DNA of 64,000 nt from Mytilus edulis (GCF_963676685.1 NC_092344.1:44206001-44270000); one strand, 5' to 3'; positions 2,100 to 25,540 are shown, counted from the stretch's first letter. The notes: generated from the sequence alone by a model not told the origin. Numbers and translations: made by a program.

Positions 2100-2139
2100 G
2101 TATGACTATGAAGGATACATTGTTATTGTTATGATTATG

Positions 2140-3284: not shown

Positions 3285-4130
3285 GAAGAATAAACAACGT
3301 GATAAAAAACTTGTAGAAGGACATTATATATATATAGACTACTGACAAATCTGAAATTACTCCAGTACAATTGTTTATGACCATTCAGTTAAATGTTCAT
3401 TACAAAAAGTTACATGTATAATGATTAAGAATATGTATGTCATGTCAAATAGTCATGTGATAATACAATATTCCTGTATTTTTTCAAAAAATACTTAACA
3501 TATTAAACTGTTATTTACTTAAGCTTGTTACTGTGTTTGTTTGATGCCCCTACTGAACTCAGTTAGGGGTACATAGTGGTTCACATGTCAGTCTCTTTAT
3601 TGGTCCTTCTGTCTCACCTAACCTAATCTCAATATAATTTAAACCTAATGTCATGGGCATAAAATACAGGTAAAGTTTGATTGAATTTTTTTTAACCAGT
3701 TAAGTGATATGTTTCTTAAAATTGGAAGTATCAATACAAGATCTACAAAAATGCCAATACGACTGAAACCATTTGATGAATCCTAATATGATTTATTGCC
3801 CTAAATTATTTTACGATTATTTTCAGAATTATCTTAAAAACTAGAATTGATAAGTAGAAGCTGTAAACAGCAGTCTTACAACAATTATTTTGTCTGCTTT
3901 CAAAAGTACCATATGATTGAAAGTTGATTTTTTTATAACATGATGTCATAGACAATAAACTGCAGGTAAAGTGTAATTTTGACAGATTTGATATATCGGA
4001 TAAAGGTATGCTAAAGGAAAATGTTTACATGGTTTACCGTAACAATCGAATGGACAAAATAAAAGCATCCTTGAAATCGCAACAAGCTCCTTCGACGGAG
4101 CCTGTTGTGATTTCAAGGATGCTTGGGTAT

Positions 4131-4620
4131 CTAAAACTGACTCAAGGCAAGACGGACTGAGATGGCATCAGCACGTTTTTCAACAGAGGGTTCAAGCATA
4201 GAGGAGACAAGGGATTTTACGATGTCGCTAGTGTTTTCGGGTGAAAAGAGAGGGTGTTTGAGAGTTGAGCTTTGACCATAGAGGTTGCGTCACTATCGGA
4301 GAATGGGAAAGCTCCGAAGAGCATGACGTAGAGCATAACTCCCATACTCCACATGTCGGCTTTCATGGTGTTGTGTTCCATTCCCATAATAACTTCGGGG
4401 GCAGCGTATGGGAGGGTTCCACAAAATTCTTCAGATTCGGCAACAACAACGGTTGATTTGGCAAATCCAAAATCGGCCAGTTTGACACATCCATTTGATA
4501 ACAAGACGTTTTCTAATTTAATGTCATTGTGGGCGATTCCGTTTAAGTGGCAGTATTCGACTGCTTTGACAACTTGAGAGAAGACAGATAGGGTGGCTTC
4601 AACGGACATGAGGCCGTTTT
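4131..4620 (-). pseudogene. 5'-truncated, frameshifted kinase copy (copy 0)
   Basis: Matches the C-terminal two thirds of the array ORF; frameshift near 4240 (TCGGGTGAAAAG vs TCGGGGAAAG); broken by the element at 4621. Confidence 0.92.
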
Positions 4621-6867
4621 TATACGACCGCAAAATTTGAAAAAATTTTCGTCGTATATTGCTATCACGTTGGCGTCGTCGTCGTCCGAATACTTTTAGT
4701 TTTCGCACTCTAACTTTAGTAAAAATGAATAGAAATCTGTGAAATTTTAACACAAGGTTTATGACCACAAAAGGAAGGTTGGAATTGATTTTGGGAGTTT
4801 TAGTCCCAACATTTTAGGAATTAGGGGCCAAAAAGGGCCCAAATAAGCATTTTCTTGGTTTTCGCACTATAACTTTAGTTTAAGTAAATAGAAATCTATG
4901 AAATTTTGACATAAGGTTTATGACCACAAAAGAAAGGTTGGGATTGATTTTGGGAGTTTTGGTTCCAACAGTTTAGGAATTAGGGGCCAAAAAAGGGCCA
5001 AAATAAGCATTATTCTTGGTTTTCGCACAATAACTTTAGTTTAAGTAAATAGAAATCAATGAAATTTTAACACAAGCATACCCGTAGCCAGGGGGGGTTC
5101 GGGGGGTTCGGACGAACCCCCCCTTGAAAACAAATAATGACTGTTAAAGTCAACGTTCTGTTCGAATTGTGACTGTAAAAGTCGAGTTTTTGAGGCCAAC
5201 GAACCCCCCTTTGGAAATTCCTGGCTACGGGCCTGACAAGGTTTATGACCACAAAAGGAAGGTTGGGATTGATTTTTGGAGTTGAGGTCACAACAGTTTA
5301 TGAACTAGGGGCCAAAAAGGGGCCCAAATAAGCATTATTTTTGGTTTTTGCACCGTAACTTTAGTATAAGTAAATAGAAATCTATGAAATTTAAACACAA
5401 GGTTTATGACCATAAAAGGAAGGTTGGGTTTGATTTTGGGAGTTTTGGTCCTTACAGTTTAGGAATAAGGGTCCCAAAGGGTCCAAAATTGAACTTTGTG
5501 TGATTTCATCAAAAATTGAATAATTGGGGTTCTTTGATATGACGAATCTAACTATGTATGTAGATTCTTAAATTTTGGTCCCGTTTTCAAATTGGTCTAC
5601 ATTAAGATCCAAAGGGTCCAAAATTAAACTTAGTTTGATTTTAACAAAAATTGAATCCTTGGGGTTCTTTGATATGCTGAATTTAAAAATGTACTTAGAT
5701 TTTTAATTATTGGCCTAGTTTTCAAGTTGGTCCAAATGGGGGTCCAAAATTAAACTTTGTTTGATTTCATCAAAAATTGAATAAATGGGTTCTTTGATAT
5801 GCCAAATCTAACTGTGTATGTAGATTCTTAATTTTTGGTCCAGTTTTCAAATTGGTCTACATTAAGGTCCAAAGGGTCCAAAATTAAACTAAGTTTGATT
5901 TTAACAAAAATTAAATTCTTGGGCTTATTTGATATGCTTTATCTAAATATGTACTTTGATTTTTGATTATGGGCCCAGTTTTCAAGTTGGTCCAAATCAG
6001 GATTCCATATCAAGTATTGTGCAATAGCAAGAAATTTTCAATTGCACAGTATTGCACAATAGCAAGAAATATCTAATTGCACAATATTGTGCAATAGCAA
6101 TTAATTTTCAATTGGAGTTATCTTTCTTTGTATAGAATAGTAGTTGATAATATATGTTGGAAATTTGCCAGACATGACTATGATGTCATTTTCTATTTTT
6201 ATTTGCCAATAACTTTATGTAAATAACTTCATTGGAAATTTGCCAATATAAAATGTTGCTGATGAAGCTGTTTTTCCTTATCTTATCTAAAATGTTTTTA
6301 GATAATGTATGTTGGACATTTGCCAGACATGACTATGATGTCATTTTCTATTTTTATTTGCCAATAACTTTATGTAAATAACTTCATTGGAAATTTGCCA
6401 ATATAAAATGTTGCTGATGAAGTTTTTTTTATTGTTTTATACAATAAACAATGTATATTCACTTTTACTACCAACCAATCTTTACCATTCAGTGATAACA
6501 AGCACTTTATTTTACATTTTAATATTTTATGATGTATTTAAAAGAGTAGTTATTGTTGCAAACTCCATTAGAAATTTGACTTGATATCAGTTTTGGAAAA
6601 AAGGGAAACGGGGATGTGAAAAAGGGGGGGGGGGTAAATTTTTCTCATTTCAGATTTCATAAATAAAAAGAAAATTTCTTCAAACATTTTTTTGAGAGGA
6701 TTAATATTCAACAGCATAGTGAATTGCTAAAAGGCAAAAACAAACTTTTAAGTTCATTAGACCACATTCATTCTGTGTCAGAAACCTATGCTGTGTCAAC
6801 TATTTAATTTTAGATTTAAAAAGTTTGAAGAAGAAATCTTTAATTGTAAAATTTGTAAAATCTTGAC
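4621..6867 (+). mobile_element. Non-autonomous Helentron/HINE (DINE-like) element, 3'-truncated
   Basis: Starts in a T-run with TATACGAC...GTCGTATA inverted repeat and a (GTC)n microsatellite, then internal tandem repeats. Lacks the terminal hairpin seen in the related copy at ~2920-2950. Confidence 0.75.
5077..5235. mobile_element. 159-bp MITE nested in the HINE
   Basis: TIRs CATACCCGTAGCCAGG / CCTGGCTACGGGCCTG; 5-bp target duplication ACAAG at 5072-5076 and 5236-5240. Confidence 0.88.
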
Positions 6868-6919
6868 AGGTATGCTAAAGGAAAATGTTTACATGGTTTA
6901 CCGTAACAATCGAATGGAC

Positions 6920-6988
6920 AAAAAAAAAGCATCCTTGAAATCGCAACAAGCTCCTACGACGGAGCCTGTTGTGATTTCAAGGATGCTT
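6920..6988 (-). terminator. 28-bp stem-loop plus T9/T10 tract just after the kinase stop codon (one per unit); putative 3'-end formation element
   Basis: Arms 6927-6954 and 6961-6988 (26/28 Watson-Crick), 6-nt loop, A-run 6920-6928 on +. Structure is certain; function is inferred. Confidence 0.6.
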
Positions 6989-6994
6989 GGGTAT

Positions 6995-7732
6995 CTAAAA
7001 CTGACTCAAGGCAAGACGGACTGAGATGGCATCAGCACGTTTTTCAACAGAGGGTTCAAGCATAGAGGAGACAAGGGATTTTACGATGTCGCTAGTGTTT
7101 TCGGGGAAAGAGAGGGTGTTTGAGAGTTGAGCTTTGACCATAGAGGTTGCGTCACTATCGGAGAATGGGAAAGCTCCGAAGAGCATGACGTAGAGCATAA
7201 CTCCCATACTCCACATGTCGGCTTTCATGGTGTTGTGTTCCATTCCCATAATAACTTCGGGGGCAGCGTATGGGAGGGTTCCACAAAATTCTTCAGATTC
7301 GGCAACAACAACGGTTGATTTGGCAAATCCAAAATCGGCCAGTTTGACACATCCATTTGATAACAAGACGTTTTCTAATTTAATGTCATTGTGGGCGATT
7401 CCGTTTAAGTGGCAGTATTCGACTGCTTTGACAACTTGAGAGAAGACAGATAGGGTGGCTTCAACGGACATGAGGCCGTTTTTCATTATGTATTCAAAAA
7501 CATCTCCGAATTCAGCGAATTCCATCAAAACGAAGGCAAATTCTTCGGCTTCGATGATTTCAATGGCTTCGACAATGTTTTCGTGTTTGAGGCTGAGGAA
7601 AGCTTCAAACTCAGTAGAGGTTTTGAGGACTTTTTTAATTGCAACTTTACCGAATACTTCGCTAGAGGCGGAGAAAACTTCTTCAGTTAGGGCTACAACG
7701 TTTGAAAGTCCACTGTTCAATAAAAATTCCAT
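6995..7732 (-). CDS. Intronless Ser/Thr kinase, CAMK group (TSSK/AMPK-like), copy 1
   Basis: 245 aa; VAIK, alphaC Glu, HNDIKLEN, DFG, FCGTLPYAAPE, DMWSMGV, subdomain XI Arg. Confidence 0.92.
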   Translation of the reverse strand: MEFLLNSGLSNVVALTEEVFSASSEVFGKVAIKKVLKTSTEFEAFLSLKHENIVEAIEIIEAEEFAFVLMEFAEFGDVFEYIMKNGLMSVEATLSVFSQVVKAVEYCHLNGIAHNDIKLENVLLSNGCVKLADFGFAKSTVVVAESEEFCGTLPYAAPEVIMGMEHNTMKADMWSMGVMLYVMLFGAFPFSDSDATSMVKAQLSNTLSFPENTSDIVKSLVSSMLEPSVEKRADAISVRLALSQF

Positions 7733-7740
7733 TTTAAATT

Positions 7741-7795
7741 GGCGTGAATTTAGTGTAATAAAGGTATCAAAATACTGAAATTCACGCCTTATATA
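7741..7795 (-). promoter_or_regulatory. TATA box and adjacent inverted repeat upstream of the kinase ATG (one per unit)
   Basis: Minus strand TATATAA (7795-7789), then GGCGTGAATTT...AAATTCACGCC (7788-7741), then ATG at 7732. Confidence 0.6.
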
Positions 7796-8861
7796 GTGAT
7801 ATGGCTGCTACGGACTGTTCCAATAATTGATGCTCAAGGGTGGAAAGTTCAAATAAAGGCTTTCTTACACAATAAAACAGTACATTATTGAACAATCTCC
7901 CCTTTTCATTAATGGTAACTACTCTTACAAACGGTAAACAAAGTATTTGGTTGTACTAGGGCATTTATCTTATAAGTTTACCGTGTTGCCTTTTAACTGT
8001 GGTGTTTACCGTAACCATAAACTTTTACGATAAAGGTTTGCCGTAACCCAACAAGTCATTATACAGTTCAGTTTACCGTTTCGTCGTATGCAAAAATTAC
8101 CACAGCAAGCCAAATGTAAACCGATGAAATCATTTTCGTTTTAAAAGAAGATATGTGTTACCAATATATTTAAGTTATTGGGATTAGAACACGATTCCAT
8201 AAAATATATAACTATGGACTGACCATAAATTCTTGTTTACTGTAACCACATGAAATCGGTTACAAAGCCGATTCTCAAACCTTCAATACAAAGAAAGTTA
8301 GAGGATTGTTAGAGAATAATAGTCAACTTGTTTTCCATTTCTCCCCAAACCCATGAACCTCCGGCTGTAATTTTAAAATGCATTCTTGTTTACCGTAACC
8401 GCTCAATATATTAGTCCCATAATCCCATTATCACAATTAGAATATCTTATGTTATCCTTATAAGCTACAGCTTGCTTTGTTACGGGATTGTGCGGTGATA
8501 CGGTAAACTAGAATAACAATTAATGAATAGACGAAGTCGTAGCTTGCGCCTTCTAATTTTCTGTTTCTCTGCATTCAAGGTTTTTCGGAAGAAACCATTT
8601 TTAATTCACGTCACAGTAAGTCTATTAATGAAAATAGAATGAGTTTGTTGAAACAAAGAAGATGGGAAGATGAATGGAATATAAAATTGATTGATACAAT
8701 TATGTTTACCGTACCCTTATATTGTATCGGATAAAGGTATGCTAAAGGAAAATGTTTACATGGTTTACCGTAACAATCGAATGGACAAAAAAAAAGCATC
8801 CTTGAAATCGCAACAAGCTCCTACGACGGAGCCTGTTGTGATTTCAAGGATGCTTGGGTAT

Positions 8862-9599
8862 CTAAAACTGACTCAAGGCAAGACGGACTGAGATGGCATC
8901 AGCACGTTTTTCAACAGAGGGTTCAAGCATAGAGGAGACAAGGGATTTTACGATGTCGCTAGTGTTTTCGGGGAAAGAGAGGGTGTTTGAGAGTTGAGCT
9001 TTGACCATAGAGGTTGCGTCACTATCGGAGAATGGGAAAGCTCCGAAGAGCATGACGTAGAGCATAACTCCCATACTCCACATGTCGGCTTTCATGGTGT
9101 TGTGTTCCATTCCCATAATAACTTCGGGGGCAGCGTATGGGAGGGTTCCACAAAATTCTTCAGATTCGGCAACAACAACGGTTGATTTGGCAAATCCAAA
9201 ATCGGCCAGTTTGACACATCCATTTGATAACAAGACGTTTTCTAATTTAATGTCATTGTGGGCGATTCCGTTTAAGTGGCAGTATTCGACTGCTTTGACA
9301 ACTTGAGAGAAGACAGATAGGGTGGCTTCAACGGACATGAGGCCGTTTTTCATTATGTATTCAAAAACATCTCCGAATTCAGCGAATTCCATCAAAACGA
9401 AGGCAAATTCTTCGGCTTCGATGATTTCAATGGCTTCGACAATGTTTTCGTGTTTGAGGCTGAGGAAAGCTTCAAACTCAGTAGAGGTTTTGAGGACTTT
9501 TTTAATTGCAACTTTACCGAATACTTCGCTAGAGGCGGAGAAAACTTCTTCAGTTAGGGCTACAACGTTTGAAAGTCCACTGTTCAATAAAAATTCCAT
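8862..9599 (-). CDS. Array kinase copy 2
   Basis: Identical 245-aa translation. Confidence 0.92.
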   Translation of the reverse strand: MEFLLNSGLSNVVALTEEVFSASSEVFGKVAIKKVLKTSTEFEAFLSLKHENIVEAIEIIEAEEFAFVLMEFAEFGDVFEYIMKNGLMSVEATLSVFSQVVKAVEYCHLNGIAHNDIKLENVLLSNGCVKLADFGFAKSTVVVAESEEFCGTLPYAAPEVIMGMEHNTMKADMWSMGVMLYVMLFGAFPFSDSDATSMVKAQLSNTLSFPENTSDIVKSLVSSMLEPSVEKRADAISVRLALSQF

Positions 9600-10728
9600 T
9601 TTAAATTGGCGTGGATTTAGTGTAATAAAGGTATCAAAATACTGAAATTCACGCCTTATATAGTGATATGGCTGCTACGGACTGTTCCAATAATTGATGC
9701 TCAAGGGTGGAAAGTTCAAATAAAGGCTTTCTTACACAATAAAACAGTACATTATTGAACAATCTCCCCTTTTCATTAATGGTAACTACTCTTACAAACG
9801 GTAAACAAAGTATTTGGTTGTACTAGGGCATTTATCTTATAAGTTTACCGTGTTGCCTTTTAACTGTGGTGTTTACCGTAACCATAAACTTTTACGATAA
9901 AGGTTTGCCGTAACCCAACAAGTCATTATACAGTTCAGTTTACCGTTTCGTCGTATGCAAAAATTACCACAGCAAGCCAAATGTAAACCGATGAAATCAT
10001 TTTCGTTTTAAAAGAAGATATGTGTTACCAATATATTTAAGTTATTGGGATTAGAACACGATTCCATAAAATATATAACTATGGACTGACCATAAATTCT
10101 TGTTTACTGTAACCACATGAAATCGGTTACAAAGCCGATTCTCAAACCTTCAATACAAAGAAAGTTAGAGGATTGTTAGAGAATAATAGTCAACTTGTTT
10201 TCCATTTCTCCCCAAACCCATGAACCTCCGGCTGTAATTTTAAAATGCATTCTTGTTTACCGTAACCGCTCAATATATTAGTCCCATAATCCCATTATCA
10301 CAATTAGAATATCTTATGTTATCCTTATAAGCTACAGCTTGCTTTGTTACGGGATTGTGCGGTGATACGGTAAACTAGAATAACAATTAATGAATAGACG
10401 AAGTCGTAGCTTGCGCCTTCTAATTTTCTGTTTCTCTGCATTCAAGGTTTTTCGGAAGAAACCATTTTTAATTCACGTCACAGTAAGTCTATTAATGAAA
10501 ATAGAATGAGTTTGTTGAAACAAAGAAGATGGGAAGATGAATGGAATATAAAATTGATTGATACAATTATGTTTACCGTACCCTTATATTGTATCGGATA
10601 AAGGTATGCTAAAGGAAAATGTTTACATGGTTTACCGTAACAATCGAATGGACAAAAAAAAAGCATCCTTGAAATCGCAACAAGCTCCTACGACGGAGCC
10701 TGTTGTGATTTCAAGGATGCTTGGGTAT

Positions 10729-11466
10729 CTAAAACTGACTCAAGGCAAGACGGACTGAGATGGCATCAGCACGTTTTTCAACAGAGGGTTCAAGCATAGA
10801 GGAGACAAGGGATTTTACGATGTCGCTAGTGTTTTCGGGGAAAGAGAGGGTGTTTGAGAGTTGAGCTTTGACCATAGAGGTTGCGTCACTATCGGAGAAT
10901 GGGAAAGCTCCGAAGAGCATGACGTAGAGCATAACTCCCATACTCCACATGTCGGCTTTCATGGTGTTGTGTTCCATTCCCATAATAACTTCGGGGGCAG
11001 CGTATGGGAGGGTTCCACAAAATTCTTCAGATTCGGCAACAACAACGGTTGATTTGGCAAATCCAAAATCGGCCAGTTTGACACATCCATTTGATAACAA
11101 GACGTTTTCTAATTTAATGTCATTGTGGGCGATTCCGTTTAAGTGGCAGTATTCGACTGCTTTGACAACTTGAGAGAAGACAGATAGGGTGGCTTCAACG
11201 GACATGAGGCCGTTTTTCATTATGTATTCAAAAACATCTCCGAATTCAGCGAATTCCATCAAAACGAAGGCAAATTCTTCGGCTTCGATGATTTCAATGG
11301 CTTCGACAATGTTTTCGTGTTTGAGGCTGAGGAAAGCTTCAAACTCAGTAGAGGTTTTGAGGACTTTTTTAATTGCAACTTTACCGAATACTTCGCTAGA
11401 GGCGGAGAAAACTTCTTCAGTTAGGGCTACAACGTTTGAAAGTCCACTGTTCAATAAAAATTCCAT
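10729..11466 (-). CDS. Array kinase copy 3
   Basis: Identical 245-aa translation. Confidence 0.92.
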   Translation of the reverse strand: MEFLLNSGLSNVVALTEEVFSASSEVFGKVAIKKVLKTSTEFEAFLSLKHENIVEAIEIIEAEEFAFVLMEFAEFGDVFEYIMKNGLMSVEATLSVFSQVVKAVEYCHLNGIAHNDIKLENVLLSNGCVKLADFGFAKSTVVVAESEEFCGTLPYAAPEVIMGMEHNTMKADMWSMGVMLYVMLFGAFPFSDSDATSMVKAQLSNTLSFPENTSDIVKSLVSSMLEPSVEKRADAISVRLALSQF

Positions 11467-12596
11467 TTTAAATTGGCGTGGATTTAGTGTAATAAAGGTA
11501 TCAAAATACTGAAATTCACGCCTTATATAGTGATATGGCTGCTACGGACTGTTCCAATAATTGATGCTCAAGGGTGGAAAGTTCAAATAAAGGCTTTCTT
11601 ACACAATAAAACAGTACATTATTGAACAATCTCCCCTTTTCATTAATGGTAACTACTCTTACAAACGGTAAACAAAGTATTTGGTTGTACTAGGGCATTT
11701 ATCTTATAAGTTTACCGTGTTGCCTTTTAACTGTGGTGTTTACCGTAACCATAAACTTTTACGATAAAGGTTTGCCGTAACCCAACAAGTCATTATACAG
11801 TTCAGTTTACCGTTTCGTCGTATGCAATAATTACCACAGCAAGCCAAATGTAAACCGATGAAATCATTTTCGTTTTAAAAGAAGATATGTGTTACCAATA
11901 TATTTAAGTTATTGGGATTAGAACACGATTCCACAAAATATATAACTATGGACTGACCATAAATTCTTGTTTACTGTAACCACATGAAATCGGTTACAAA
12001 GCCGATTCTCAAACCTTCAATACAAAGAAAGTTAGAGGATTGTTAGAGAATAATAGTCAACTTGTTTTCCATTTCTCCCCAAACCCATGAACCTCCGGCT
12101 GTAATTTTAAAATGCATTCTTGTTTACCGTAACCGCTCAATATATTAGTCCCATAATCCCATTATCACAATTAGAATATCTTATGTTATCCTTATAAGCT
12201 ACAGCTTGCTTTGTTACGGGATTGTGCGGTGATACGGTAAACTAGAATAACAATTAATGAATAGACTAAGTCGTAGCTTGCGCCTTCTAATTTTCTGTTT
12301 CTCTGCATTCAAGGTTTTTCGGAAGAAACCATTTTTAATTCACGTCACAGTAAGTCTATTAATGAAAATAGAATGAGTTTGTTGAAACAAAGAAGATGGG
12401 AAGATGAATGGAATATAAAATTGATTGATACAATTATGTTTACCGTACCCTTATATTGTATCGGATAAAGGTATGCTAAAGGAAAATGTTTACATGGTTT
12501 ACCGTAACAATCGAATGGACAAAAAAAAAAGCATCCTTGAAATCGCAACAAGCTCCTACGACGGAGCCTGTTGTGATTTCAAGGATGCTTGGGTAT

Positions 12597-16332: not shown

Positions 16333-17070
16333 CTAAAACTGACTCAAGGCAAGACGGACTGAGATGGCATCAGCACGTTTTTCAACAGAGGGTTCAAGCA
16401 TAGAGGAGACAAGGGATTTTACGATGTCGCTAGTGTTTTCGGGGAAAGAGAGGGTGTTTGAGAGTTGAGCTTTGACCATAGAGGTTGCGTCACTATCGGA
16501 GAATGGGAAAGCTCCGAAGAGCATGACGTAGAGCATAACTCCCATACTCCACATGTCGGCTTTCATGGTGTTGTGTTCCATTCCCATAATAACTTCGGGG
16601 GCAGCGTATGGGAGGGTTCCACAAAATTCTTCAGATTCGGCAACAACAACGGTTGATTTGGCAAATCCAAAATCGGCCAGTTTGACACATCCATTTGATA
16701 ACAAGACGTTTTCTAATTTAATGTCATTGTGGGCGATTCCGTTTAAGTGGCAGTATTCGACTGCTTTGACAACTTGAGAGAAGACAGATAGGGTGGCTTC
16801 AACGGACATGAGGCCGTTTTTCATTATGTATTCAAAAACATCTCCGAATTCAGCGAATTCCATCAAAACGAAGGCAAATTCTTCGGCTTCGATGATTTCA
16901 ATGGCTTCGACAATGTTTTCGTGTTTGAGGCTGAGGAAAGCTTCAAACTCAGTAGAGGTTTTGAGGACTTTTTTAATTGCAACTTTACCGAATACTTCGC
17001 TAGAGGCGGAGAAAACTTCTTCAGTTAGGGCTACAACGTTTGAAAGTCCACTGTTCAATAAAAATTCCAT
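16333..17070 (-). CDS. Array kinase copy 6
   Basis: Identical 245-aa translation. Confidence 0.92.
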   Translation of the reverse strand: MEFLLNSGLSNVVALTEEVFSASSEVFGKVAIKKVLKTSTEFEAFLSLKHENIVEAIEIIEAEEFAFVLMEFAEFGDVFEYIMKNGLMSVEATLSVFSQVVKAVEYCHLNGIAHNDIKLENVLLSNGCVKLADFGFAKSTVVVAESEEFCGTLPYAAPEVIMGMEHNTMKADMWSMGVMLYVMLFGAFPFSDSDATSMVKAQLSNTLSFPENTSDIVKSLVSSMLEPSVEKRADAISVRLALSQF

Positions 17071-18200
17071 TTTAAATTGGCGTGGATTTAGTGTAATAAA
17101 GGTATCAAAATACTGAAATTCACGCCTTATATAGTGATATGGCTGCTACGGACTGTTCCAATAATTGATGCTCAAGGGTGGAAAGTTCAAATAAAGGCTT
17201 TCTTACACAATAAAACAGTACATTATTGAACAATCTCCCCTTTTCATTAATGGTAACTACTCTTACAAACGGTAAACAAAGTATTTGGTTGTACTAGGGC
17301 ATTTATCTTATAAGTTTACCGTGTTGCCTTTTAACTGTGGTGTTTACCGTAACCATAAACTTTTACGATAAAGGTTTGCCGTAACCCAACAAGTCATTAT
17401 ACAGTTCAGTTTACCGTTTCGTCGTATGCAATAATTACCACAGCAAGCCAAATGTAAACCGATGAAATCATTTTCGTTTTAAAAGAAGATATGTGTTACC
17501 AATATATTTAAGTTATTGGGATTAGAACACGATTCCACAAAATATATAACTATGGACTGACCATAAATTCTTGTTTACTGTAACCACATGAAATCGGTTA
17601 CAAAGCCGATTCTCAAACCTTCAATACAAAGAAAGTTAGAGGATTGTTAGAGAATAATAGTCAACTTGTTTTCCATTTCTCCCCAAACCCATGAACCTCC
17701 GGCTGTAATTTTAAAATGCATTCTTGTTTACCGTAACCGCTCAATATATTAGTCCCATAATCCCATTATCACAATTAGAATATCTTATGTTATCCTTATA
17801 AGCTACAGCTTGCTTTGTTACGGGATTGTGCGGTGATACGGTAAACTAGAATAACAATTAATGAATAGACTAAGTCGTAGCTTGCGCCTTCTAATTTTCT
17901 GTTTCTCTGCATTCAAGGTTTTTCGGAAGAAACCATTTTTAATTCACGTCACAGTAAGTCTATTAATGAAAATAGAATGAGTTTGTTGAAACAAAGAAGA
18001 TGGGAAGATGAATGGAATATAAAATTGATTGATACAATTATGTTTACCGTACCCTTATATTGTATCGGATAAAGGTATGCTAAAGGAAAATGTTTACATG
18101 GTTTACCGTAACAATCGAATGGACAAAAAAAAAAGCATCCTTGAAATCGCAACAAGCTCCTACGACGGAGCCTGTTGTGATTTCAAGGATGCTTGGGTAT

Positions 18201-18938
18201 CTAAAACTGACTCAAGGCAAGACGGACTGAGATGGCATCAGCACGTTTTTCAACAGAGGGTTCAAGCATAGAGGAGACAAGGGATTTTACGATGTCGCTA
18301 GTGTTTTCGGGGAAAGAGAGGGTGTTTGAGAGTTGAGCTTTGACCATAGAGGTTGCGTCACTATCGGAGAATGGGAAAGCTCCGAAGAGCATGACGTAGA
18401 GCATAACTCCCATACTCCACATGTCGGCTTTCATGGTGTTGTGTTCCATTCCCATAATAACTTCGGGGGCAGCGTATGGGAGGGTTCCACAAAATTCTTC
18501 AGATTCGGCAACAACAACGGTTGATTTGGCAAATCCAAAATCGGCCAGTTTGACACATCCATTTGATAACAAGACGTTTTCTAATTTAATGTCATTGTGG
18601 GCGATTCCGTTTAAGTGGCAGTATTCGACTGCTTTGACAACTTGAGAGAAGACAGATAGGGTGGCTTCAACGGACATGAGGCCGTTTTTCATTATGTATT
18701 CAAAAACATCTCCGAATTCAGCGAATTCCATCAAAACGAAGGCAAATTCTTCGGCTTCGATGATTTCAATGGCTTCGACAATGTTTTCGTGTTTGAGGCT
18801 GAGGAAAGCTTCAAACTCAGTAGAGGTTTTGAGGACTTTTTTAATTGCAACTTTACCGAATACTTCGCTAGAGGCGGAGAAAACTTCTTCAGTTAGGGCT
18901 ACAACGTTTGAAAGTCCACTGTTCAATAAAAATTCCAT
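18201..18938 (-). CDS. Array kinase copy 7
   Basis: Identical 245-aa translation. Confidence 0.92.
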   Translation of the reverse strand: MEFLLNSGLSNVVALTEEVFSASSEVFGKVAIKKVLKTSTEFEAFLSLKHENIVEAIEIIEAEEFAFVLMEFAEFGDVFEYIMKNGLMSVEATLSVFSQVVKAVEYCHLNGIAHNDIKLENVLLSNGCVKLADFGFAKSTVVVAESEEFCGTLPYAAPEVIMGMEHNTMKADMWSMGVMLYVMLFGAFPFSDSDATSMVKAQLSNTLSFPENTSDIVKSLVSSMLEPSVEKRADAISVRLALSQF

Positions 18939-20068
18939 TTTAAATTGGCGTGGATTTAGTGTAATAAAGGTATCAAAATACTGAAATTCACGCCTTATAT
19001 AGTGATATGGCTGCTACGGACTGTTCCAATAATTGATGCTCAAGGGTGGAAAGTTCAAATAAAGGCTTTCTTACACAATAAAACAGTACATTATTGAACA
19101 ATCTCCCCTTTTCATTAATGGTAACTACTCTTACAAACGGTAAACAAAGTATTTGGTTGTACTAGGGCATTTATCTTATAAGTTTACCGTGTTGCCTTTT
19201 AACTGTGGTGTTTACCGTAACCATAAACTTTTACGATAAAGGTTTGCCGTAACCCAACAAGTCATTATACAGTTCAGTTTACCGTTTCGTCGTATGCAAT
19301 AATTACCACAGCAAGCCAAATGTAAACCGATGAAATCATTTTCGTTTTAAAAGAAGATATGTGTTACCAATATATTTAAGTTATTGGGATTAGAACACGA
19401 TTCCACAAAATATATAACTATGGACTGACCATAAATTCTTGTTTACTGTAACCACATGAAATCGGTTACAAAGCCGATTCTCAAACCTTCAATACAAAGA
19501 AAGTTAGAGGATTGTTAGAGAATAATAGTCAACTTGTTTTCCATTTCTCCCCAAACCCATGAACCTCCGGCTGTAATTTTAAAATGCATTCTTGTTTACC
19601 GTAACCGCTCAATATATTAGTCCCATAATCCCATTATCACAATTAGAATATCTTATGTTATCCTTATAAGCTACAGCTTGCTTTGTTACGGGATTGTGCG
19701 GTGATACGGTAAACTAGAATAACAATTAATGAATAGACTAAGTCGTAGCTTGCGCCTTCTAATTTTCTGTTTCTCTGCATTCAAGGTTTTTCGGAAGAAA
19801 CCATTTTTAATTCACGTCACAGTAAGTCTATTAATGAAAATAGAATGAGTTTGTTGAAACAAAGAAGATGGGAAGATGAATGGAATATAAAATTGATTGA
19901 TACAATTATGTTTACCGTACCCTTATATTGTATCGGATAAAGGTATGCTAAAGGAAAATGTTTACATGGTTTACCGTAACAATCGAATGGACAAAAAAAA
20001 AAGCATCCTTGAAATCGCAACAAGCTCCTACGACGGAGCCTGTTGTGATTTCAAGGATGCTTGGGTAT

Positions 20069-20806
20069 CTAAAACTGACTCAAGGCAAGACGGACTGAGA
20101 TGGCATCAGCACGTTTTTCAACAGAGGGTTCAAGCATAGAGGAGACAAGGGATTTTACGATGTCGCTAGTGTTTTCGGGGAAAGAGAGGGTGTTTGAGAG
20201 TTGAGCTTTGACCATAGAGGTTGCGTCACTATCGGAGAATGGGAAAGCTCCGAAGAGCATGACGTAGAGCATAACTCCCATACTCCACATGTCGGCTTTC
20301 ATGGTGTTGTGTTCCATTCCCATAATAACTTCGGGGGCAGCGTATGGGAGGGTTCCACAAAATTCTTCAGATTCGGCAACAACAACGGTTGATTTGGCAA
20401 ATCCAAAATCGGCCAGTTTGACACATCCATTTGATAACAAGACGTTTTCTAATTTAATGTCATTGTGGGCGATTCCGTTTAAGTGGCAGTATTCGACTGC
20501 TTTGACAACTTGAGAGAAGACAGATAGGGTGGCTTCAACGGACATGAGGCCGTTTTTCATTATGTATTCAAAAACATCTCCGAATTCAGCGAATTCCATC
20601 AAAACGAAGGCAAATTCTTCGGCTTCGATGATTTCAATGGCTTCGACAATGTTTTCGTGTTTGAGGCTGAGGAAAGCTTCAAACTCAGTAGAGGTTTTGA
20701 GGACTTTTTTAATTGCAACTTTACCGAATACTTCGCTAGAGGCGGAGAAAACTTCTTCAGTTAGGGCTACAACGTTTGAAAGTCCACTGTTCAATAAAAA
20801 TTCCAT
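20069..20806 (-). CDS. Array kinase copy 8
   Basis: Identical 245-aa translation. Confidence 0.92.
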   Translation of the reverse strand: MEFLLNSGLSNVVALTEEVFSASSEVFGKVAIKKVLKTSTEFEAFLSLKHENIVEAIEIIEAEEFAFVLMEFAEFGDVFEYIMKNGLMSVEATLSVFSQVVKAVEYCHLNGIAHNDIKLENVLLSNGCVKLADFGFAKSTVVVAESEEFCGTLPYAAPEVIMGMEHNTMKADMWSMGVMLYVMLFGAFPFSDSDATSMVKAQLSNTLSFPENTSDIVKSLVSSMLEPSVEKRADAISVRLALSQF

Positions 20807-21936
20807 TTTAAATTGGCGTGGATTTAGTGTAATAAAGGTATCAAAATACTGAAATTCACGCCTTATATAGTGATATGGCTGCTACGGACTGTTCCAATAA
20901 TTGATGCTCAAGGGTGGAAAGTTCAAATAAAGGCTTTCTTACACAATAAAACAGTACATTATTGAACAATCTCCCCTTTTCATTAATGGTAACTACTCTT
21001 ACAAACGGTAAACAAAGTATTTGGTTGTACTAGGGCATTTATCTTATAAGTTTACCGTGTTGCCTTTTAACTGTGGTGTTTACCGTAACCATAAACTTTT
21101 ACGATAAAGGTTTGCCGTAACCCAACAAGTCATTATACAGTTCAGTTTACCGTTTCGTCGTATGCAATAATTACCACAGCAAGCCAAATGTAAACCGATG
21201 AAATCATTTTCGTTTTAAAAGAAGATATGTGTTACCAATATATTTAAGTTATTGGGATTAGAACACGATTCCACAAAATATATAACTATGGACTGACCAT
21301 AAATTCTTGTTTACTGTAACCACATGAAATCGGTTACAAAGCCGATTCTCAAACCTTCAATACAAAGAAAGTTAGAGGATTGTTAGAGAATAATAGTCAA
21401 CTTGTTTTCCATTTCTCCCCAAACCCATGAACCTCCGGCTGTAATTTTAAAATGCATTCTTGTTTACCGTAACCGCTCAATATATTAGTCCCATAATCCC
21501 ATTATCACAATTAGAATATCTTATGTTATCCTTATAAGCTACAGCTTGCTTTGTTACGGGATTGTGCGGTGATACGGTAAACTAGAATAACAATTAATGA
21601 ATAGACTAAGTCGTAGCTTGCGCCTTCTAATTTTCTGTTTCTCTGCATTCAAGGTTTTTCGGAAGAAACCATTTTTAATTCACGTCACAGTAAGTCTATT
21701 AATGAAAATAGAATGAGTTTGTTGAAACAAAGAAGATGGGAAGATGAATGGAATATAAAATTGATTGATACAATTATGTTTACCGTACCCTTATATTGTA
21801 TCGGATAAAGGTATGCTAAAGGAAAATGTTTACATGGTTTACCGTAACAATCGAATGGACAAAAAAAAAAGCATCCTTGAAATCGCAACAAGCTCCTACG
21901 ACGGAGCCTGTTGTGATTTCAAGGATGCTTGGGTAT

Positions 21937-22674
21937 CTAAAACTGACTCAAGGCAAGACGGACTGAGATGGCATCAGCACGTTTTTCAACAGAGGGTTCA
22001 AGCATAGAGGAGACAAGGGATTTTACGATGTCGCTAGTGTTTTCGGGGAAAGAGAGGGTGTTTGAGAGTTGAGCTTTGACCATAGAGGTTGCGTCACTAT
22101 CGGAGAATGGGAAAGCTCCGAAGAGCATGACGTAGAGCATAACTCCCATACTCCACATGTCGGCTTTCATGGTGTTGTGTTCCATTCCCATAATAACTTC
22201 GGGGGCAGCGTATGGGAGGGTTCCACAAAATTCTTCAGATTCGGCAACAACAACGGTTGATTTGGCAAATCCAAAATCGGCCAGTTTGACACATCCATTT
22301 GATAACAAGACGTTTTCTAATTTAATGTCATTGTGGGCGATTCCGTTTAAGTGGCAGTATTCGACTGCTTTGACAACTTGAGAGAAGACAGATAGGGTGG
22401 CTTCAACGGACATGAGGCCGTTTTTCATTATGTATTCAAAAACATCTCCGAATTCAGCGAATTCCATCAAAACGAAGGCAAATTCTTCGGCTTCGATGAT
22501 TTCAATGGCTTCGACAATGTTTTCGTGTTTGAGGCTGAGGAAAGCTTCAAACTCAGTAGAGGTTTTGAGGACTTTTTTAATTGCAACTTTACCGAATACT
22601 TCGCTAGAGGCGGAGAAAACTTCTTCAGTTAGGGCTACAACGTTTGAAAGTCCACTGTTCAATAAAAATTCCAT
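21937..22674 (-). CDS. Array kinase copy 9
   Basis: Identical 245-aa translation. Confidence 0.92.
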   Translation of the reverse strand: MEFLLNSGLSNVVALTEEVFSASSEVFGKVAIKKVLKTSTEFEAFLSLKHENIVEAIEIIEAEEFAFVLMEFAEFGDVFEYIMKNGLMSVEATLSVFSQVVKAVEYCHLNGIAHNDIKLENVLLSNGCVKLADFGFAKSTVVVAESEEFCGTLPYAAPEVIMGMEHNTMKADMWSMGVMLYVMLFGAFPFSDSDATSMVKAQLSNTLSFPENTSDIVKSLVSSMLEPSVEKRADAISVRLALSQF

Positions 22675-23804
22675 TTTAAATTGGCGTGGATTTAGTGTAA
22701 TAAAGGTATCAAAATACTGAAATTCACGCCTTATATAGTGATATGGCTGCTACGGACTGTTCCAATAATTGATGCTCAAGGGTGGAAAGTTCAAATAAAG
22801 GCTTTCTTACACAATAAAACAGTACATTATTGAACAATCTCCCCTTTTCATTAATGGTAACTACTCTTACAAACGGTAAACAAAGTATTTGGTTGTACTA
22901 GGGCATTTATCTTATAAGTTTACCGTGTTGCCTTTTAACTGTGGTGTTTACCGTAACCATAAACTTTTACGATAAAGGTTTGCCGTAACCCAACAAGTCA
23001 TTATACAGTTCAGTTTACCGTTTCGTCGTATGCAATAATTACCACAGCAAGCCAAATGTAAACCGATGAAATCATTTTCGTTTTAAAAGAAGATATGTGT
23101 TACCAATATATTTAAGTTATTGGGATTAGAACACGATTCCACAAAATATATAACTATGGACTGACCATAAATTCTTGTTTACTGTAACCACATGAAATCG
23201 GTTACAAAGCCGATTCTCAAACCTTCAATACAAAGAAAGTTAGAGGATTGTTAGAGAATAATAGTCAACTTGTTTTCCATTTCTCCCCAAACCCATGAAC
23301 CTCCGGCTGTAATTTTAAAATGCATTCTTGTTTACCGTAACCGCTCAATATATTAGTCCCATAATCCCATTATCACAATTAGAATATCTTATGTTATCCT
23401 TATAAGCTACAGCTTGCTTTGTTACGGGATTGTGCGGTGATACGGTAAACTAGAATAACAATTAATGAATAGACTAAGTCGTAGCTTGCGCCTTCTAATT
23501 TTCTGTTTCTCTGCATTCAAGGTTTTTCGGAAGAAACCATTTTTAATTCACGTCACAGTAAGTCTATTAATGAAAATAGAATGAGTTTGTTGAAACAAAG
23601 AAGATGGGAAGATGAATGGAATATAAAATTGATTGATACAATTATGTTTACCGTACCCTTATATTGTATCGGATAAAGGTATGCTAAAGGAAAATGTTTA
23701 CATGGTTTACCGTAACAATCGAATGGACAAAAAAAAAAGCATCCTTGAAATCGCAACAAGCTCCTACGACGGAGCCTGTTGTGATTTCAAGGATGCTTGG
23801 GTAT

Positions 23805-24542
23805 CTAAAACTGACTCAAGGCAAGACGGACTGAGATGGCATCAGCACGTTTTTCAACAGAGGGTTCAAGCATAGAGGAGACAAGGGATTTTACGATGTC
23901 GCTAGTGTTTTCGGGGAAAGAGAGGGTGTTTGAGAGTTGAGCTTTGACCATAGAGGTTGCGTCACTATCGGAGAATGGGAAAGCTCCGAAGAGCATGACG
24001 TAGAGCATAACTCCCATACTCCACATGTCGGCTTTCATGGTGTTGTGTTCCATTCCCATAATAACTTCGGGGGCAGCGTATGGGAGGGTTCCACAAAATT
24101 CTTCAGATTCGGCAACAACAACGGTTGATTTGGCAAATCCAAAATCGGCCAGTTTGACACATCCATTTGATAACAAGACGTTTTCTAATTTAATGTCATT
24201 GTGGGCGATTCCGTTTAAGTGGCAGTATTCGACTGCTTTGACAACTTGAGAGAAGACAGATAGGGTGGCTTCAACGGACATGAGGCCGTTTTTCATTATG
24301 TATTCAAAAACATCTCCGAATTCAGCGAATTCCATCAAAACGAAGGCAAATTCTTCGGCTTCGATGATTTCAATGGCTTCGACAATGTTTTCGTGTTTGA
24401 GGCTGAGGAAAGCTTCAAACTCAGTAGAGGTTTTGAGGACTTTTTTAATTGCAACTTTACCGAATACTTCGCTAGAGGCGGAGAAAACTTCTTCAGTTAG
24501 GGCTACAACGTTTGAAAGTCCACTGTTCAATAAAAATTCCAT
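23805..24542 (-). CDS. Array kinase copy 10
   Basis: Identical 245-aa translation. Confidence 0.92.
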   Translation of the reverse strand: MEFLLNSGLSNVVALTEEVFSASSEVFGKVAIKKVLKTSTEFEAFLSLKHENIVEAIEIIEAEEFAFVLMEFAEFGDVFEYIMKNGLMSVEATLSVFSQVVKAVEYCHLNGIAHNDIKLENVLLSNGCVKLADFGFAKSTVVVAESEEFCGTLPYAAPEVIMGMEHNTMKADMWSMGVMLYVMLFGAFPFSDSDATSMVKAQLSNTLSFPENTSDIVKSLVSSMLEPSVEKRADAISVRLALSQF

Positions 24543-25540
24543 TTTAAATTGGCGTGGATTTAGTGTAATAAAGGTATCAAAATACTGAAATTCACGCCTT
24601 ATATAGTGATATGGCTGCTACGGACTGTTCCAATAATTGATGCTCAAGGGTGGAAAGTTCAAATAAAGGCTTTCTTACACAATAAAACAGTACATTATTG
24701 AACAATCTCCCCTTTTCATTAATGGTAACTACTCTTACAAACGGTAAACAAAGTATTTGGTTGTACTAGGGCATTTATCTTATAAGTTTACCGTGTTGCC
24801 TTTTAACTGTGGTGTTTACCGTAACCATAAACTTTTACGATAAAGGTTTGCCGTAACCCAACAAGTCATTATACAGTTCAGTTTACCGTTTCGTCGTATG
24901 CAATAATTACCACAGCAAGCCAAATGTAAACCGATGAAATCATTTTCGTTTTAAAAGAAGATATGTGTTACCAATATATTTAAGTTATTGGGATTAGAAC
25001 ACGATTCCACAAAATATATAACTATGGACTGACCATAAATTCTTGTTTACTGTAACCACATGAAATCGGTTACAAAGCCGATTCTCAAACCTTCAATACA
25101 AAGAAAGTTAGAGGATTGTTAGAGAATAATAGTCAACTTGTTTTCCATTTCTCCCCAAACCCATGAACCTCCGGCTGTAATTTTAAAATGCATTCTTGTT
25201 TACCGTAACCGCTCAATATATTAGTCCCATAATCCCATTATCACAATTAGAATATCTTATGTTATCCTTATAAGCTACAGCTTGCTTTGTTACGGGATTG
25301 TGCGGTGATACGGTAAACTAGAATAACAATTAATGAATAGACTAAGTCGTAGCTTGCGCCTTCTAATTTTCTGTTTCTCTGCATTCAAGGTTTTTCGGAA
25401 GAAACCATTTTTAATTCACGTCACAGTAAGTCTATTAATGAAAATAGAATGAGTTTGTTGAAACAAAGAAGATGGGAAGATGAATGGAATATAAAATTGA
25501 TTGATACAATTATGTTTACCGTACCCTTATATTGTATCGG

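What the first reader, a model, noticed from the sequence alone, without database searches (positions are those of the whole stretch)
3994..25540. Candidate new system: a tandemly amplified, self-contained intronless kinase cassette
Seen: ten identical 245-aa kinase ORFs in a 1867/1868-bp head-to-tail unit, between the converging 3' ends of two ordinary multi-exon genes (DNAJC2, SFMBT). Each unit has a TATA box, a 5' hairpin, a 3' stem-loop with U-tract, ~10 copies of one 12-bp motif and a sharp junction. Known: intronless tandem arrays with stem-loop 3' ends are the histone-gene design. Amplified kinase or kinase-subunit genes occur in germline drive systems (mouse Smok/Tcr, Drosophila Stellate). 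TSSK kinases are spermatid kinases. Inference: this is either a dosage-amplified germline kinase, possibly selfish, or a kinase-carrying mobile cassette.
Basis: partly seen in the sequence, partly recalled or inferred. Interest (0 to 1): 0.92.

Follow-up and report, generated by a model that had tools for sequence, protein, structure and literature searches.

The report
Tandem array of stripped-down mussel kinases
Ten near-identical head-to-tail copies of a small intronless TSSK3-like kinase gene sit on a blue mussel (Mytilus) chromosome; this is an old, selectively maintained, mussel-specific gene family kept uniform by concerted evolution, not a new kind of genetic system.

Summary
Window 6868-25540 holds ten head-to-tail units of 1867/1868 bp. 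Each unit has one 245-aa intronless kinase ORF on the minus strand. Units 3-10 are identical; units 1-2 differ by four SNPs and one A-run length.

The genome is Mytilus edulis, and RefSeq already names these genes "TSSK3-like". A second array lies on another chromosome (91% amino-acid identity, dS 0.26, dN/dS 0.15). Both paralogue types occur in M. galloprovincialis and M. trossulus, and M. coruscus carries closely related copies. An independent metagenome contig reproduces the head-to-tail junction.

The protein folds as a complete kinase (pLDDT 93). The family has lost all three P-loop glycines, has HRD changed to HND, carries Glu in place of the activation-loop Thr, is almost Arg-free and is very acidic (pI 4.5).

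Three unit features are conserved between the two arrays while the rest of the spacer has decayed:
- a TATA promoter;
- about ten copies of ACGGTAAAC;
- a long hairpin plus U-run just after the stop codon.

The 5' hairpin is not conserved. The 3' hairpin is not the histone stem-loop. No transposon hallmarks were found.

Best reading: a dosage-amplified, probably constitutively active kinase, most likely of the male germline.

The parts
6868..25540 (-). Tandem array proper: 9 full units of 1867/1868 bp plus a last unit of 1863 bp. Each unit carries one kinase gene.
6995..7732 (-). Kinase CDS copy 1 (245 aa). Copies 2-10 have the same protein at 8862-9599, 10729-11466, 12597-13334, 14465-15202, 16333-17070, 18201-18938, 20069-20806, 21937-22674 and 23805-24542.
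   Evidence: Pfam Pkinase E 1.3e-50. AF2 pLDDT 93.
12597..13334 (-). Kinase CDS copy 4, in the representative unit used for the feature coordinates below.
13389..13397 (-). TATA box TATATAAGG, 63 nt upstream of the ATG of copy 4. It recurs once per unit.
   Evidence: Conserved in the chromosome-3 array.
13335..13545 (-). Proximal promoter and 5' leader, about 210 bp. Well conserved between the two arrays.
13533..14373 (.). Upstream region holding about 10 copies per unit of the (GTT)ACGGTAAAC motif: 8 exact and 2 with one mismatch, most in the sense orientation.
   Evidence: Motif columns are 87% identical between arrays against 53% outside.
12529..12590 (-). 3' hairpin of copy 4 (27-bp stem, 6-nt loop), starting 6 nt after the stop codon. 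It is the same element as 14397-14458 of copy 5.
   Evidence: Not a dispersed repeat.
12519..12528 (-). U/T run (T10 on the sense strand) directly after the hairpin.
   Evidence: Conserved as T9 in the second array.
3994..4621 (-). 11th copy, a pseudogene: the last 489 nt of the CDS with a frameshift, the 3' hairpin, and 11 bp of the next unit. 99.2% identical to array units.
4622..6867 (.). Complete copy of an abundant, young, non-coding dispersed element with internal tandem repeats. It separates the pseudogene from the array.
   Evidence: more than 6800 first-look candidates; copies 97-99% identical..
25541..25731 (-). Remnant of a further unit (unit coordinates 1619-1809, 96.3% identical), joined to the last unit through a CGG microhomology.
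1905..2105 (+). Flanking gene exon: SANT/Myb domain. Best solved relative is the DNAJC2 SANT domain.
39894..45327 (-). Flanking gene exons: SLED domain (39894-40280) and two MBT repeats (42020-42364, 44986-45327), indicating an SFMBT/Scm-like gene.

Best explanation
This is a genuine tandem gene array of a mussel-specific offshoot of the short, domain-only TSSK3-like kinases.

History. The family arose before the Mytilus species split. It sits on two chromosomes. Each array is kept internally uniform by unequal crossing-over or gene conversion, while purifying selection holds the protein.

Protein. The kinase keeps every catalytic residue: beta3 Lys, alphaC Glu, the catalytic Asp and Asn, DFG and APE. 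It has lost the usual regulatory handles:
- the Arg of HRD is gone;
- the activation-loop Thr is replaced by an acidic, phosphomimetic Glu;
- there are no flanking regulatory domains.
So it is most likely a constitutively active catalytic unit whose output is set only by how much is made. That fits gene amplification plus a strong, self-contained promoter.

Unit. Each unit is its own transcription unit: about ten copies of a conserved ACGGTAAAC element over roughly 1 kb, a TATA box, a short leader, an intronless CDS, and a hairpin plus U-run straight after the stop. The hairpin plus U-run probably helps 3'-end formation or insulates each unit from read-through into the next.

Function. By homology with TSSKs, the most likely setting is spermiogenesis. 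The extreme acidity and lack of Arg would suit very basic substrates such as sperm nuclear basic proteins.

Shown: the array, family age, selection, fold, residue pattern, and conserved cis-elements.
Inferred: catalytic activity, constitutive state, role of the motif and hairpin, testis expression, substrates.
For: Array and near-identity:
-.

Independent support for multi-copy, head-to-tail structure:
- A metagenome contig holds 1.83 units of period 1870 and is 98.9% identical across the same junction.
- Two or more copies per contig occur in older M. edulis, M. galloprovincialis and M. coruscus assemblies.

Age and selection:
- A second array lies on chromosome 3 at 91% amino-acid identity, with dS 0.26, dN 0.038 and dN/dS 0.147.
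- Between individuals, the CDS differs by 0.4% and the spacer by about 1.4%.
- Both paralogue types occur in M. edulis, M. galloprovincialis and M. trossulus; M. coruscus carries closely related copies.

Kinase identity:
- Pfam 172.7 bits; AF2 pLDDT 93 with a full N-lobe; Foldseek finds AMPK, SIK and MARK.
- Invariant K33, D116, K118, N121, D133-F-G and A157-P-E159, and near-invariant E41, across 20 sequences.
- The P-loop reads TEEVFS, HRD is H[N/C/S/G]D, and the activation loop is SE/DEF.

Placement:
- The family is a 100/100 clade on a long stem (1.3 substitutions per site).
- It lies inside a TSSK-labelled clade (98/97) and is sister to short bivalve kinases that keep GxGxxG and HRD.
- The Atlas's nearest cluster is TSSK3.

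Composition:
- pI 4.4-5.0 and 1-5 Arg throughout the family.

Cis-elements:
- Motif: 82 observed against 0.34 expected. Number, order and orientation are kept in the second array, while the spacer is only 53% identical.
- TATA box and proximal promoter are conserved.
- The hairpin base and U-run are conserved despite a 20-nt apical indel.

Context:
- TSSKs are male-biased in bivalves and are needed for the histone-to-protamine transition in flies (PMC8042308, PMC5800059, PMC10164148).
Against: - No expression data of any kind were obtained.
- Loss of all three P-loop glycines, with a Glu in the second position, is a common pseudokinase trait, so catalysis is not assured.
- The long stem branch signals a change of function, which weakens transfer of the 'testis' label from canonical TSSKs.
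- The M. edulis testis kinase published in 2011 is a different gene: one of its two primers was tested and does not match.
- ATTAAA signals at +258 and +302 mean the hairpin may simply lie inside an ordinary polyadenylated 3' UTR.
- The exact copy number (10) rests on one assembly.
Confidence: 0.6

Rival explanations
1. Burst-expression cassette of the early embryo or oocyte rather than the testis. Short, intronless, TATA-driven, multi-copy genes with many copies of one upstream motif are the typical design of first-wave zygotic genes. A maternal pioneer factor would bind the ACGGTAAAC sites, which also occur in repeat families.
For: - Intronless compact units with a TATA box.
- About 10 conserved motif copies per unit.
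- The same motif occurs as triplets spaced 22 bp apart in unrelated non-coding repeat families elsewhere in the genome.
- CpG observed/expected is about 0.95 in the array against 0.59 in the flank.
- The long stem branch suggests a new function.
Against: - All named relatives are TSSK-type, which are male-germline kinases wherever they have been studied (PMC8042308).
- No expression data exist either way.
Confidence: 0.2
2. Non-catalytic pseudokinase. The amplified protein acts as an abundant acidic scaffold, decoy or structural sperm protein rather than as an enzyme.
For: - The P-loop GxGxxG is replaced by TxExxS throughout the family.
- The HRD Arg is lost.
- The N-lobe linker is shortened.
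- Extreme acidity and high Phe content.
Against: - K33, D116, K118, N121, DFG and APE are invariant, and E41 nearly so, over sequences down to 67% identity.
- Pseudokinases rarely keep the whole catalytic set under such constraint.
- The fold is predicted intact.
Confidence: 0.2
3. Selfish amplified germline gene (a meiotic-drive or sex-ratio type element, in the manner of Smok/Tcr or Stellate). Copy number would be driven by intragenomic conflict, possibly linked to the paternal mitochondrial inheritance of mussels.
For: - Amplified, constitutively 'on' kinase design.
- Homogenised arrays on two chromosomes.
- Family members on three chromosomes in M. trossulus.
Against: - Strong purifying selection (dN/dS 0.15) and retention of both paralogues across four species look like an ordinary host function.
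- Drive genes usually show rapid turnover or positive selection.
- No responder or partner locus was identified.
Confidence: 0.07
4. Kinase-carrying mobile or circle-derived cassette. The unit would be amplified or relocated through rolling-circle or extrachromosomal-circle intermediates, with the ACGGTAAAC copies acting as iteron-like protein-binding sites and the TATCGG hairpin as a breakage site.
For: - Three independent breakpoints fall within the 11 bp TATCGGATAAA|GG, in a small inverted repeat flanked by motif copies.
- The motif is shared with dispersed non-coding repeats.
- Loci lie on different chromosomes.
Against: - No Rep, helicase or transposase ORF is present in the unit.
- There are no terminal inverted repeats or target-site duplications.
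- The hairpin is not a dispersed repeat.
- Only two loci exist in 1.37 Gb.
- The ends of the chromosome-3 array map to other unit positions.
- The unit is colinear across the 'junction' in both arrays.
Confidence: 0.08
5. The copy number is an assembly artefact: the true locus has far fewer (or more) than ten copies.
For: - Eight units are base-for-base identical.
- The 18.7-kb array is near the length of single long reads.
- No read data could be laid on it.
Against: - Edge units carry private variants.
- Decayed remnants flank the array, as expected of a real array.
- The head-to-tail junction is reproduced in an independent short-read contig.
- Multi-copy models occur in four species' assemblies.
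Confidence: 0.1

Closest known systems
TSSK3 (testis-specific serine/threonine kinase 3) and molluscan short TSSK-like kinases
   Same: - CAMK-group kinase made of little more than the catalytic domain (245 aa against about 257-277 aa).
- Intronless.
- Nearest named relatives, and nearest language-model cluster, are TSSK3/TSSK6.
- Nests inside the TSSK-labelled clade, next to short bivalve kinases.
   Different: - P-loop glycines all lost.
- HRD Arg lost.
- Activation-loop Thr replaced by Glu.
- Shortened beta3-alphaC link.
- 1-5 Arg and pI about 4.5.
- Very long stem branch.
- Tandemly amplified with concerted evolution.
- Testis expression not shown.
Replication-dependent histone gene arrays
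   Same: Intronless genes in head-to-tail arrays, each with its own TATA promoter and a stem-loop close to the stop codon.
   Different: - The stem is 17-27 bp followed by a U-run, not the 6-bp/4-nt histone stem-loop with a downstream element.
- No Rfam histone 3' element match.
- Downstream ATTAAA signals exist.
- The product is an enzyme.
Amplified testis gene families in drive or conflict systems (mouse Smok/Tcr; Drosophila Stellate/Su(Ste))
   Same: Multi-copy kinase or kinase-subunit genes with presumed male-germline action. Smok is likewise a CAMK-group kinase related to MARK.
   Different: - Here there is strong purifying selection and long-term retention in several species.
- No linked responder or suppressor repeats were identified.
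- No genetic evidence of distortion.
Non-RD, constitutively active kinases with acidic activation loops
   Same: Loss of the HRD Arg together with an acidic residue at the activation-loop phospho-site. This is the classical signature of kinases that do not need activation-loop phosphorylation (established kinase structural knowledge).
   Different: This is combined with a glycine-free P-loop. That is unusual for active kinases and untested here.

Membership tests
Eukaryotic protein kinase (Pfam PF00069) | Profile match above the curated threshold, and a kinase fold | tested here: met
   172.7 bits against a cut-off of 31.7. AF2 pLDDT 93 with five N-lobe strands, alphaC and the C-lobe. Foldseek TM 0.80-0.84 to AMPK, SIK and MARK.
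Eukaryotic protein kinase (catalytically competent) | beta3 Lys, alphaC Glu, catalytic Asp and Asn, DFG, APE | tested here: met
   K33, D116, K118, N121, D133-F-G and A157-P-E159 are invariant, and E41 nearly so, in a 20-sequence alignment.
Eukaryotic protein kinase (catalytically competent) | Gly-rich loop GxGxxG | tested here: not met
   Aligned positions read T-E-E-V-F-S in the whole family. The closest canonical relatives keep GEGSFG/GEGSYG.
Eukaryotic protein kinase (catalytically competent) | Measured ATP binding and phosphotransfer | not testable with these tools
   Needs recombinant protein.
TSSK family | Phylogenetic placement inside the TSSK clade | tested here: inconclusive
   Inside a clade of TSSK-labelled proteins (98/97) relative to CIPK, AMPK-like and CaMKI outgroups. 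MARK, SIK, NUAK and MELK were not in the tree, MARK3 is the best PDB sequence hit, and the labels are automatic names.
TSSK family | Testis- or spermatid-restricted expression | not testable with these tools
No paper on this gene was found.
TSSK family | Activation-loop Thr/Ser that is phosphorylated | tested here: not met
   S-E/D-E-F-C-G-T in place of S-x-T-F/Y-C-G-S.
Histone-type gene array | Conserved 16-nt histone 3' stem-loop | tested here: not met
   No Rfam match at gathering or at E<=1. The stem is 27 bp (C1) or 17 bp (C3).
Helitron or other DNA transposon cassette | Element-encoded Rep/transposase, defined termini or target duplications, many dispersed insertions | tested here: not met
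   The kinase is the only long ORF in the unit. Array ends differ between loci. Only two chromosomal loci exist. The hairpin is confined to the arrays.
Meiotic-drive amplified gene | Transmission distortion and rapid or positive evolution | tested here: inconclusive
   dN/dS of 0.147 between paralogous arrays argues against rapid evolution. Transmission cannot be tested here.

The most novel reading that the evidence does not exclude
The unit is a purpose-built, self-insulated expression cassette for a regulation-free kinase. Its only control would be a dedicated cis-code (about ten ACGGTAAAC sites, shared with several repeat families and read by an unknown, possibly repeat-binding, factor) together with an intrinsic-terminator-like hairpin and U-run that ends transcripts without a canonical poly(A) signal. 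The array would renew or relocate itself through breakage at one hairpin site (TATCGGATAAA). This would make it a semi-autonomous, possibly selfish, germline or early-embryo element rather than an ordinary gene family.
Probability: 0.1. Interest if true: 0.75.

Novelty: new variant of a known kind. Interest (0 to 1): 0.42.

Why it matters
If the protein is active, it is a natural example of a kinase that works without any P-loop glycine, without the RD arginine and with a built-in phosphomimetic. That bears on what the minimal kinase core is.

The arrays are a clean case of concerted evolution with purifying selection in a bivalve. They come with a built-in phylogenetic footprint: motif, TATA box and hairpin survive in a decayed spacer. 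This points to an unknown mussel DNA-binding factor and perhaps an unusual 3'-end signal.

For mussel reproduction it flags about 15 intact copies per haploid genome of a probable spermiogenesis kinase that has not been studied.

It does not amount to a new kind of genetic system on present evidence.

Tried and rejected
Expression, transcript ends and read-depth copy number are therefore untested.

Searches that found nothing useful:
- Rfam over the whole window at gathering threshold, and over one unit at E<=1, gave nothing meaningful.
- The hairpin was searched as a dispersed repeat. It occurs only in this array at that stringency.
- A forward primer from the published M. edulis testis kinase (PMC3144882) does not match the window, so that is a different gene.
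- A literature search for the motif string returned only vector (CMV enhancer) sequences, with no transcription factor assignment.
- Paper searches for a description of this Mytilus family found none.

Leads followed and set aside:
- Other genomic clusters of the motif were fetched in the hope of finding co-regulated gene arrays. They are non-coding 1.1-2.4 kb repeats without tRNA or Rfam genes.
- A Helitron reading of the 3' hairpin was considered and rejected. The CTAA that follows it on the opposite strand is the stop codon, and the unit junction lies 127 bp away.
- Pol III transcription was rejected because the CDS contains two T5 runs.
- The 74% identity first reported for the 11th copy was a gapless-alignment artefact. 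It is 99% identical with indels.

Full report
**1. The observation**

ORF listing finds ten 245-aa ORFs on the minus strand between 6995 and 24542. Repeat analysis gives spacings of 1867, 1867 and then seven times 1868 bp. Extending the self-match shows the array proper runs from 6868 to 25540.

A MAFFT alignment of the ten units shows units 3-10 are identical base for base. Units 1 and 2 differ from them by four single-base changes, and units 1-3 differ from the rest in the length of one A-run. The last unit lacks its final 5 bp. Variants sitting at one edge is the pattern expected when unequal exchange homogenises the interior of an array.

**2. The edges are not simply sharp**

It is 99.2% identical and holds only the last 489 nt of the CDS with a frameshift, the 3' hairpin, and 11 bp of a further unit.
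- 4622-6867 is, end to end, a complete copy of a very abundant non-coding dispersed element. There are more than 6800 first-look candidates, and the scored copies are 97-99% identical.
- 25541-25731, just beyond the array, is a 96.3% copy of unit coordinates 1619-1809. It is joined to the last unit through a CGG microhomology.

So the array has decayed remnants on both sides.

**3. Organism and prior annotation**

The window is chromosome-scale contig C1 (126 Mb) of a 1.37-Gb assembly. [quoted passage not shown] The genes are therefore annotated, but I found no paper that describes them. The M. edulis testis kinase isolated in 2011 (PMC3144882) is another gene: one of its two primers was tested and does not match.

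**4. Is the tandem structure real?**

Indirect evidence is good:

- A metagenome contig from an unrelated project (L025, 3425 bp) contains 1.83 units of period 1870. It is 98.9% identical to the window unit over its whole length, including the unit junction.
- Older assemblies of M. edulis, M. galloprovincialis and M. coruscus each carry two or more copies, or chimeric multi-copy models, on one contig.

The exact number, ten, still rests on this assembly alone.

**5. Family history**

- The same genome has a second set on chromosome 3: four full copies of period 1765, and 110 kb away one full and one truncated copy.
- The right end of the first block and the left end of the second are the two halves of one unit. 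This is therefore one array split by a large block of 2.19-kb-period repeats.
- The two arrays differ by 9% in protein, with dS 0.26, dN 0.038 and dN/dS 0.147.
- The window (C1) type is also present, with 1-7 substitutions, in an older M. edulis assembly, M. galloprovincialis and M. trossulus. The chromosome-3 type is in M. galloprovincialis and M. trossulus, and M. coruscus carries closely related copies. Both paralogues therefore appear to predate Mytilus speciation.
- Between the window and the independent contig, the CDS differs at 3 of 738 sites and the spacer at about 1.4%.

Within-array identity of 100%, against 1% between individuals and 10% between loci, is concerted evolution on top of purifying selection. 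Relatives at 67-83% identity from unnamed public assemblies form one tight clade with the window's protein. Because this genome holds only the two types, those relatives must come from other taxa, probably other mytilids (inference).

**6. The protein**

- Pfam Pkinase scores 172.7 bits. AlphaFold2 with the family alignment gives pLDDT 93 and a complete fold, with a compact N-lobe of three strands, a short alphaC and two more strands. Foldseek finds AMPK, SIK3 and MARK at TM about 0.8.
- Invariant across 20 sequences are the beta3 Lys (K33), D116, K118, N121, D133-F-G and A-P-E159. The alphaC Glu (E41) is nearly invariant.
- Three things have changed in the whole family. The P-loop GxGxxG reads TxExxS. 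HRD is H-N/C/S/G-D. The activation-loop Thr of relatives (S-x-T-F-C-G-S) is Glu, within S-E/D-E-F-C-G-T.
- The proteins have 1-5 Arg, about 19 Phe and pI 4.4-5.0.
- The closest canonical relatives are equally short bivalve and gastropod kinases (253-269 aa) that keep GEGSFG and HRD. Beyond them come TSSK3, TSSK2 and TSSK6-labelled proteins.
- In a maximum-likelihood tree the family is a 100/100 clade on a very long stem (1.3 substitutions per site). It lies within a TSSK-labelled clade (98/97 against CIPK, AMPK-like and CaMKI) and is sister (90/78) to the short bivalve kinases. The language-model Atlas also puts TSSK3 first. The outgroup sampling lacked MARK and SIK, so I treat TSSK membership as likely, not proven.

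Losing the RD arginine while gaining an acidic residue at the phospho-site is the classical signature of a kinase that needs no activating phosphorylation (established kinase knowledge). With no regulatory domains either, the amount made would be the only control. The glycine-free P-loop is the one feature that could mean a pseudokinase.

**7. The unit as a transcription unit** (read in the sense direction)

*Hairpin.* Six nucleotides after the stop codon comes a 27-bp hairpin (-46.7 kcal/mol, z -8.9), followed directly by T10.

*Motif.* Over the next 1 kb or so there are eight exact and two one-mismatch copies of ACGGTAAAC, often extended to GTTACGGTAAAC, mostly in the sense orientation. The window has 82 exact copies against 0.34 expected, all within array-derived sequence.

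*Promoter.* Next comes a conserved proximal promoter with TATATAAGG, 63 nt before the ATG.

*Conservation.* Aligning the spacer with that of the chromosome-3 array gives only 55% identical columns overall, 87% in motif columns and 53% elsewhere. The number, order and orientation of motif copies are preserved, and the last 210 bp or so are well conserved.

*Hairpin in the second array.* The outer 16 bp of the hairpin and the U-run are retained. The apical 20 nt are absent, leaving a perfect 17-bp stem plus U9.

These are phylogenetic footprints of function.

*Gene models.* The 275-aa RefSeq models of the chromosome-3 copies start at an ATG upstream of the TATA box. The extra 30 residues are probably not real.

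*3' end.* The hairpin is not the histone stem-loop and not a dispersed repeat. ATTAAA occurs at +258 in this array and at +302 in the other, so an ordinary polyadenylated 3' UTR containing the hairpin cannot be excluded. The idea that the hairpin plus U-run replaces a poly(A) signal remains a hypothesis.

**8. The motif elsewhere**

TTACGGTAAAC is rare genome-wide: 592 sites against 1726 for the reversed control. It is clustered, however. The other clusters I fetched are non-coding repeats of 1.1-2.4 kb in which three motif copies sit 22 bp apart. They contain no RNA genes and have no other similarity to the kinase unit. An unidentified DNA-binding factor that reads both the repeats and the kinase promoters is the simplest inference. 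No known transcription factor could be assigned.

**9. Mobile element?**

The unit has no ORF other than the kinase, no terminal repeats and no target duplications. There are only two chromosomal loci in this genome. The ends of the chromosome-3 array map to other unit positions. The sequence across the C1 junction is colinear in both arrays, so the junction is ancestral.

One oddity remains. Three breakpoints at the C1 locus fall within the 11 bp TATCGGATAAA|GG, inside a small imperfect inverted repeat flanked by motif copies. They are:
- the outer edge of the 11th copy;
- the junction between the inserted element and unit 1;
- the deletion joining unit 10 to the remnant.

A fragile site is the mildest explanation. 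Circle intermediates are not excluded.

**10. Flanks**

- A SANT exon at 1905-2105 (plus strand) best matches the DNAJC2 SANT domain.
- SLED and MBT exons at 39894-45327 (minus strand) indicate an SFMBT/Scm-like gene.
- CpG observed/expected is about 0.95 in the array against 0.59 in the flank. This suggests the array escapes germline methylation.

**11. Verdict**

The finding is real and well described. It is a lineage-specific, tandemly amplified, selectively maintained TSSK3-like kinase family with an unusual catalytic-site make-up and a neatly footprinted promoter and 3' element. It is not a new class of system.

The most likely mechanism is dosage control of a constitutively active minimal kinase, probably in spermiogenesis. 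Tissue, activity, transcript ends and copy number remain to be measured.

Noticed in passing
window 4622-6867: Complete copy of a very abundant, young, non-coding dispersed element. There are more than 6800 first-look candidates genome-wide and copies are 97-99% identical. It has internal tandem repeats of 159, 135/260 and 155 bp and a terminal palindrome. This copy has one extra 159-bp internal repeat relative to most others.
   Followed up: partly
L017, L019, L020, L021, L023 (chromosome 1 at about 5.55, 66.27, 97.19, 30.74 and 8.67 Mb); also L018 and L024: Non-coding 1.1-2.4 kb repeats, in tandem and in inverted orientation. They carry three GTTAC(G/A)GTAAAC copies spaced 22 bp apart. The ~1.1-kb family (read in L020) also has a C12/G12 palindrome and a 17-bp GTTAACCGGCGGTTGAG microsatellite. 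No tRNA or Rfam genes. The motif is the same as in the kinase promoters.
   Followed up: partly
G000 C3:19692816-19699222 and C3:19807340-19810587 (L013-L016): The chromosome-3 kinase array is one array split in two. The right end of the first block and the left end of the second are halves of the same unit. They are separated by about 109 kb and flanked on both inner sides by a 2.19-kb-period tandem repeat without long ORFs.
   Followed up: partly
L014 8248-9099, L015 65-916 and others: The RefSeq 275-aa models of the chromosome-3 copies begin at an ATG that lies upstream of the conserved TATA box. The extra 30 residues are probably an annotation artefact, and the real product is 245 aa.
   Followed up: partly
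window 3994, 6867/6868, 25540/25541: Three independent breakpoints map within 11 bp of the unit (TATCGGATAAA|GG), inside a 9-bp imperfect inverted repeat. This may be a fragile or recombination-prone site.
   Followed up: partly
window 6868-25540 against 25800-64000: CpG observed/expected is about 0.94-1.0 in both the CDS and the spacer of the array, but 0.59 in the neighbouring sequence. This suggests the array is not methylated in the germline.
   Followed up: no
window 29969-31357, 37416-37836, 41071-41726: Further tandem repeats in the introns or flank of the SFMBT-like gene: 492 bp x2.8, 26 bp x16, and 168 bp x3.9. The last overlaps a 210-aa ORF with no credible Pfam match.
   Followed up: no
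protein P0001 (M. coruscus, 360 aa): This public gene model is a chimera of three partial copies of the kinase. It is a sign that automated annotation mis-joins units of the array in that species.
   Followed up: no
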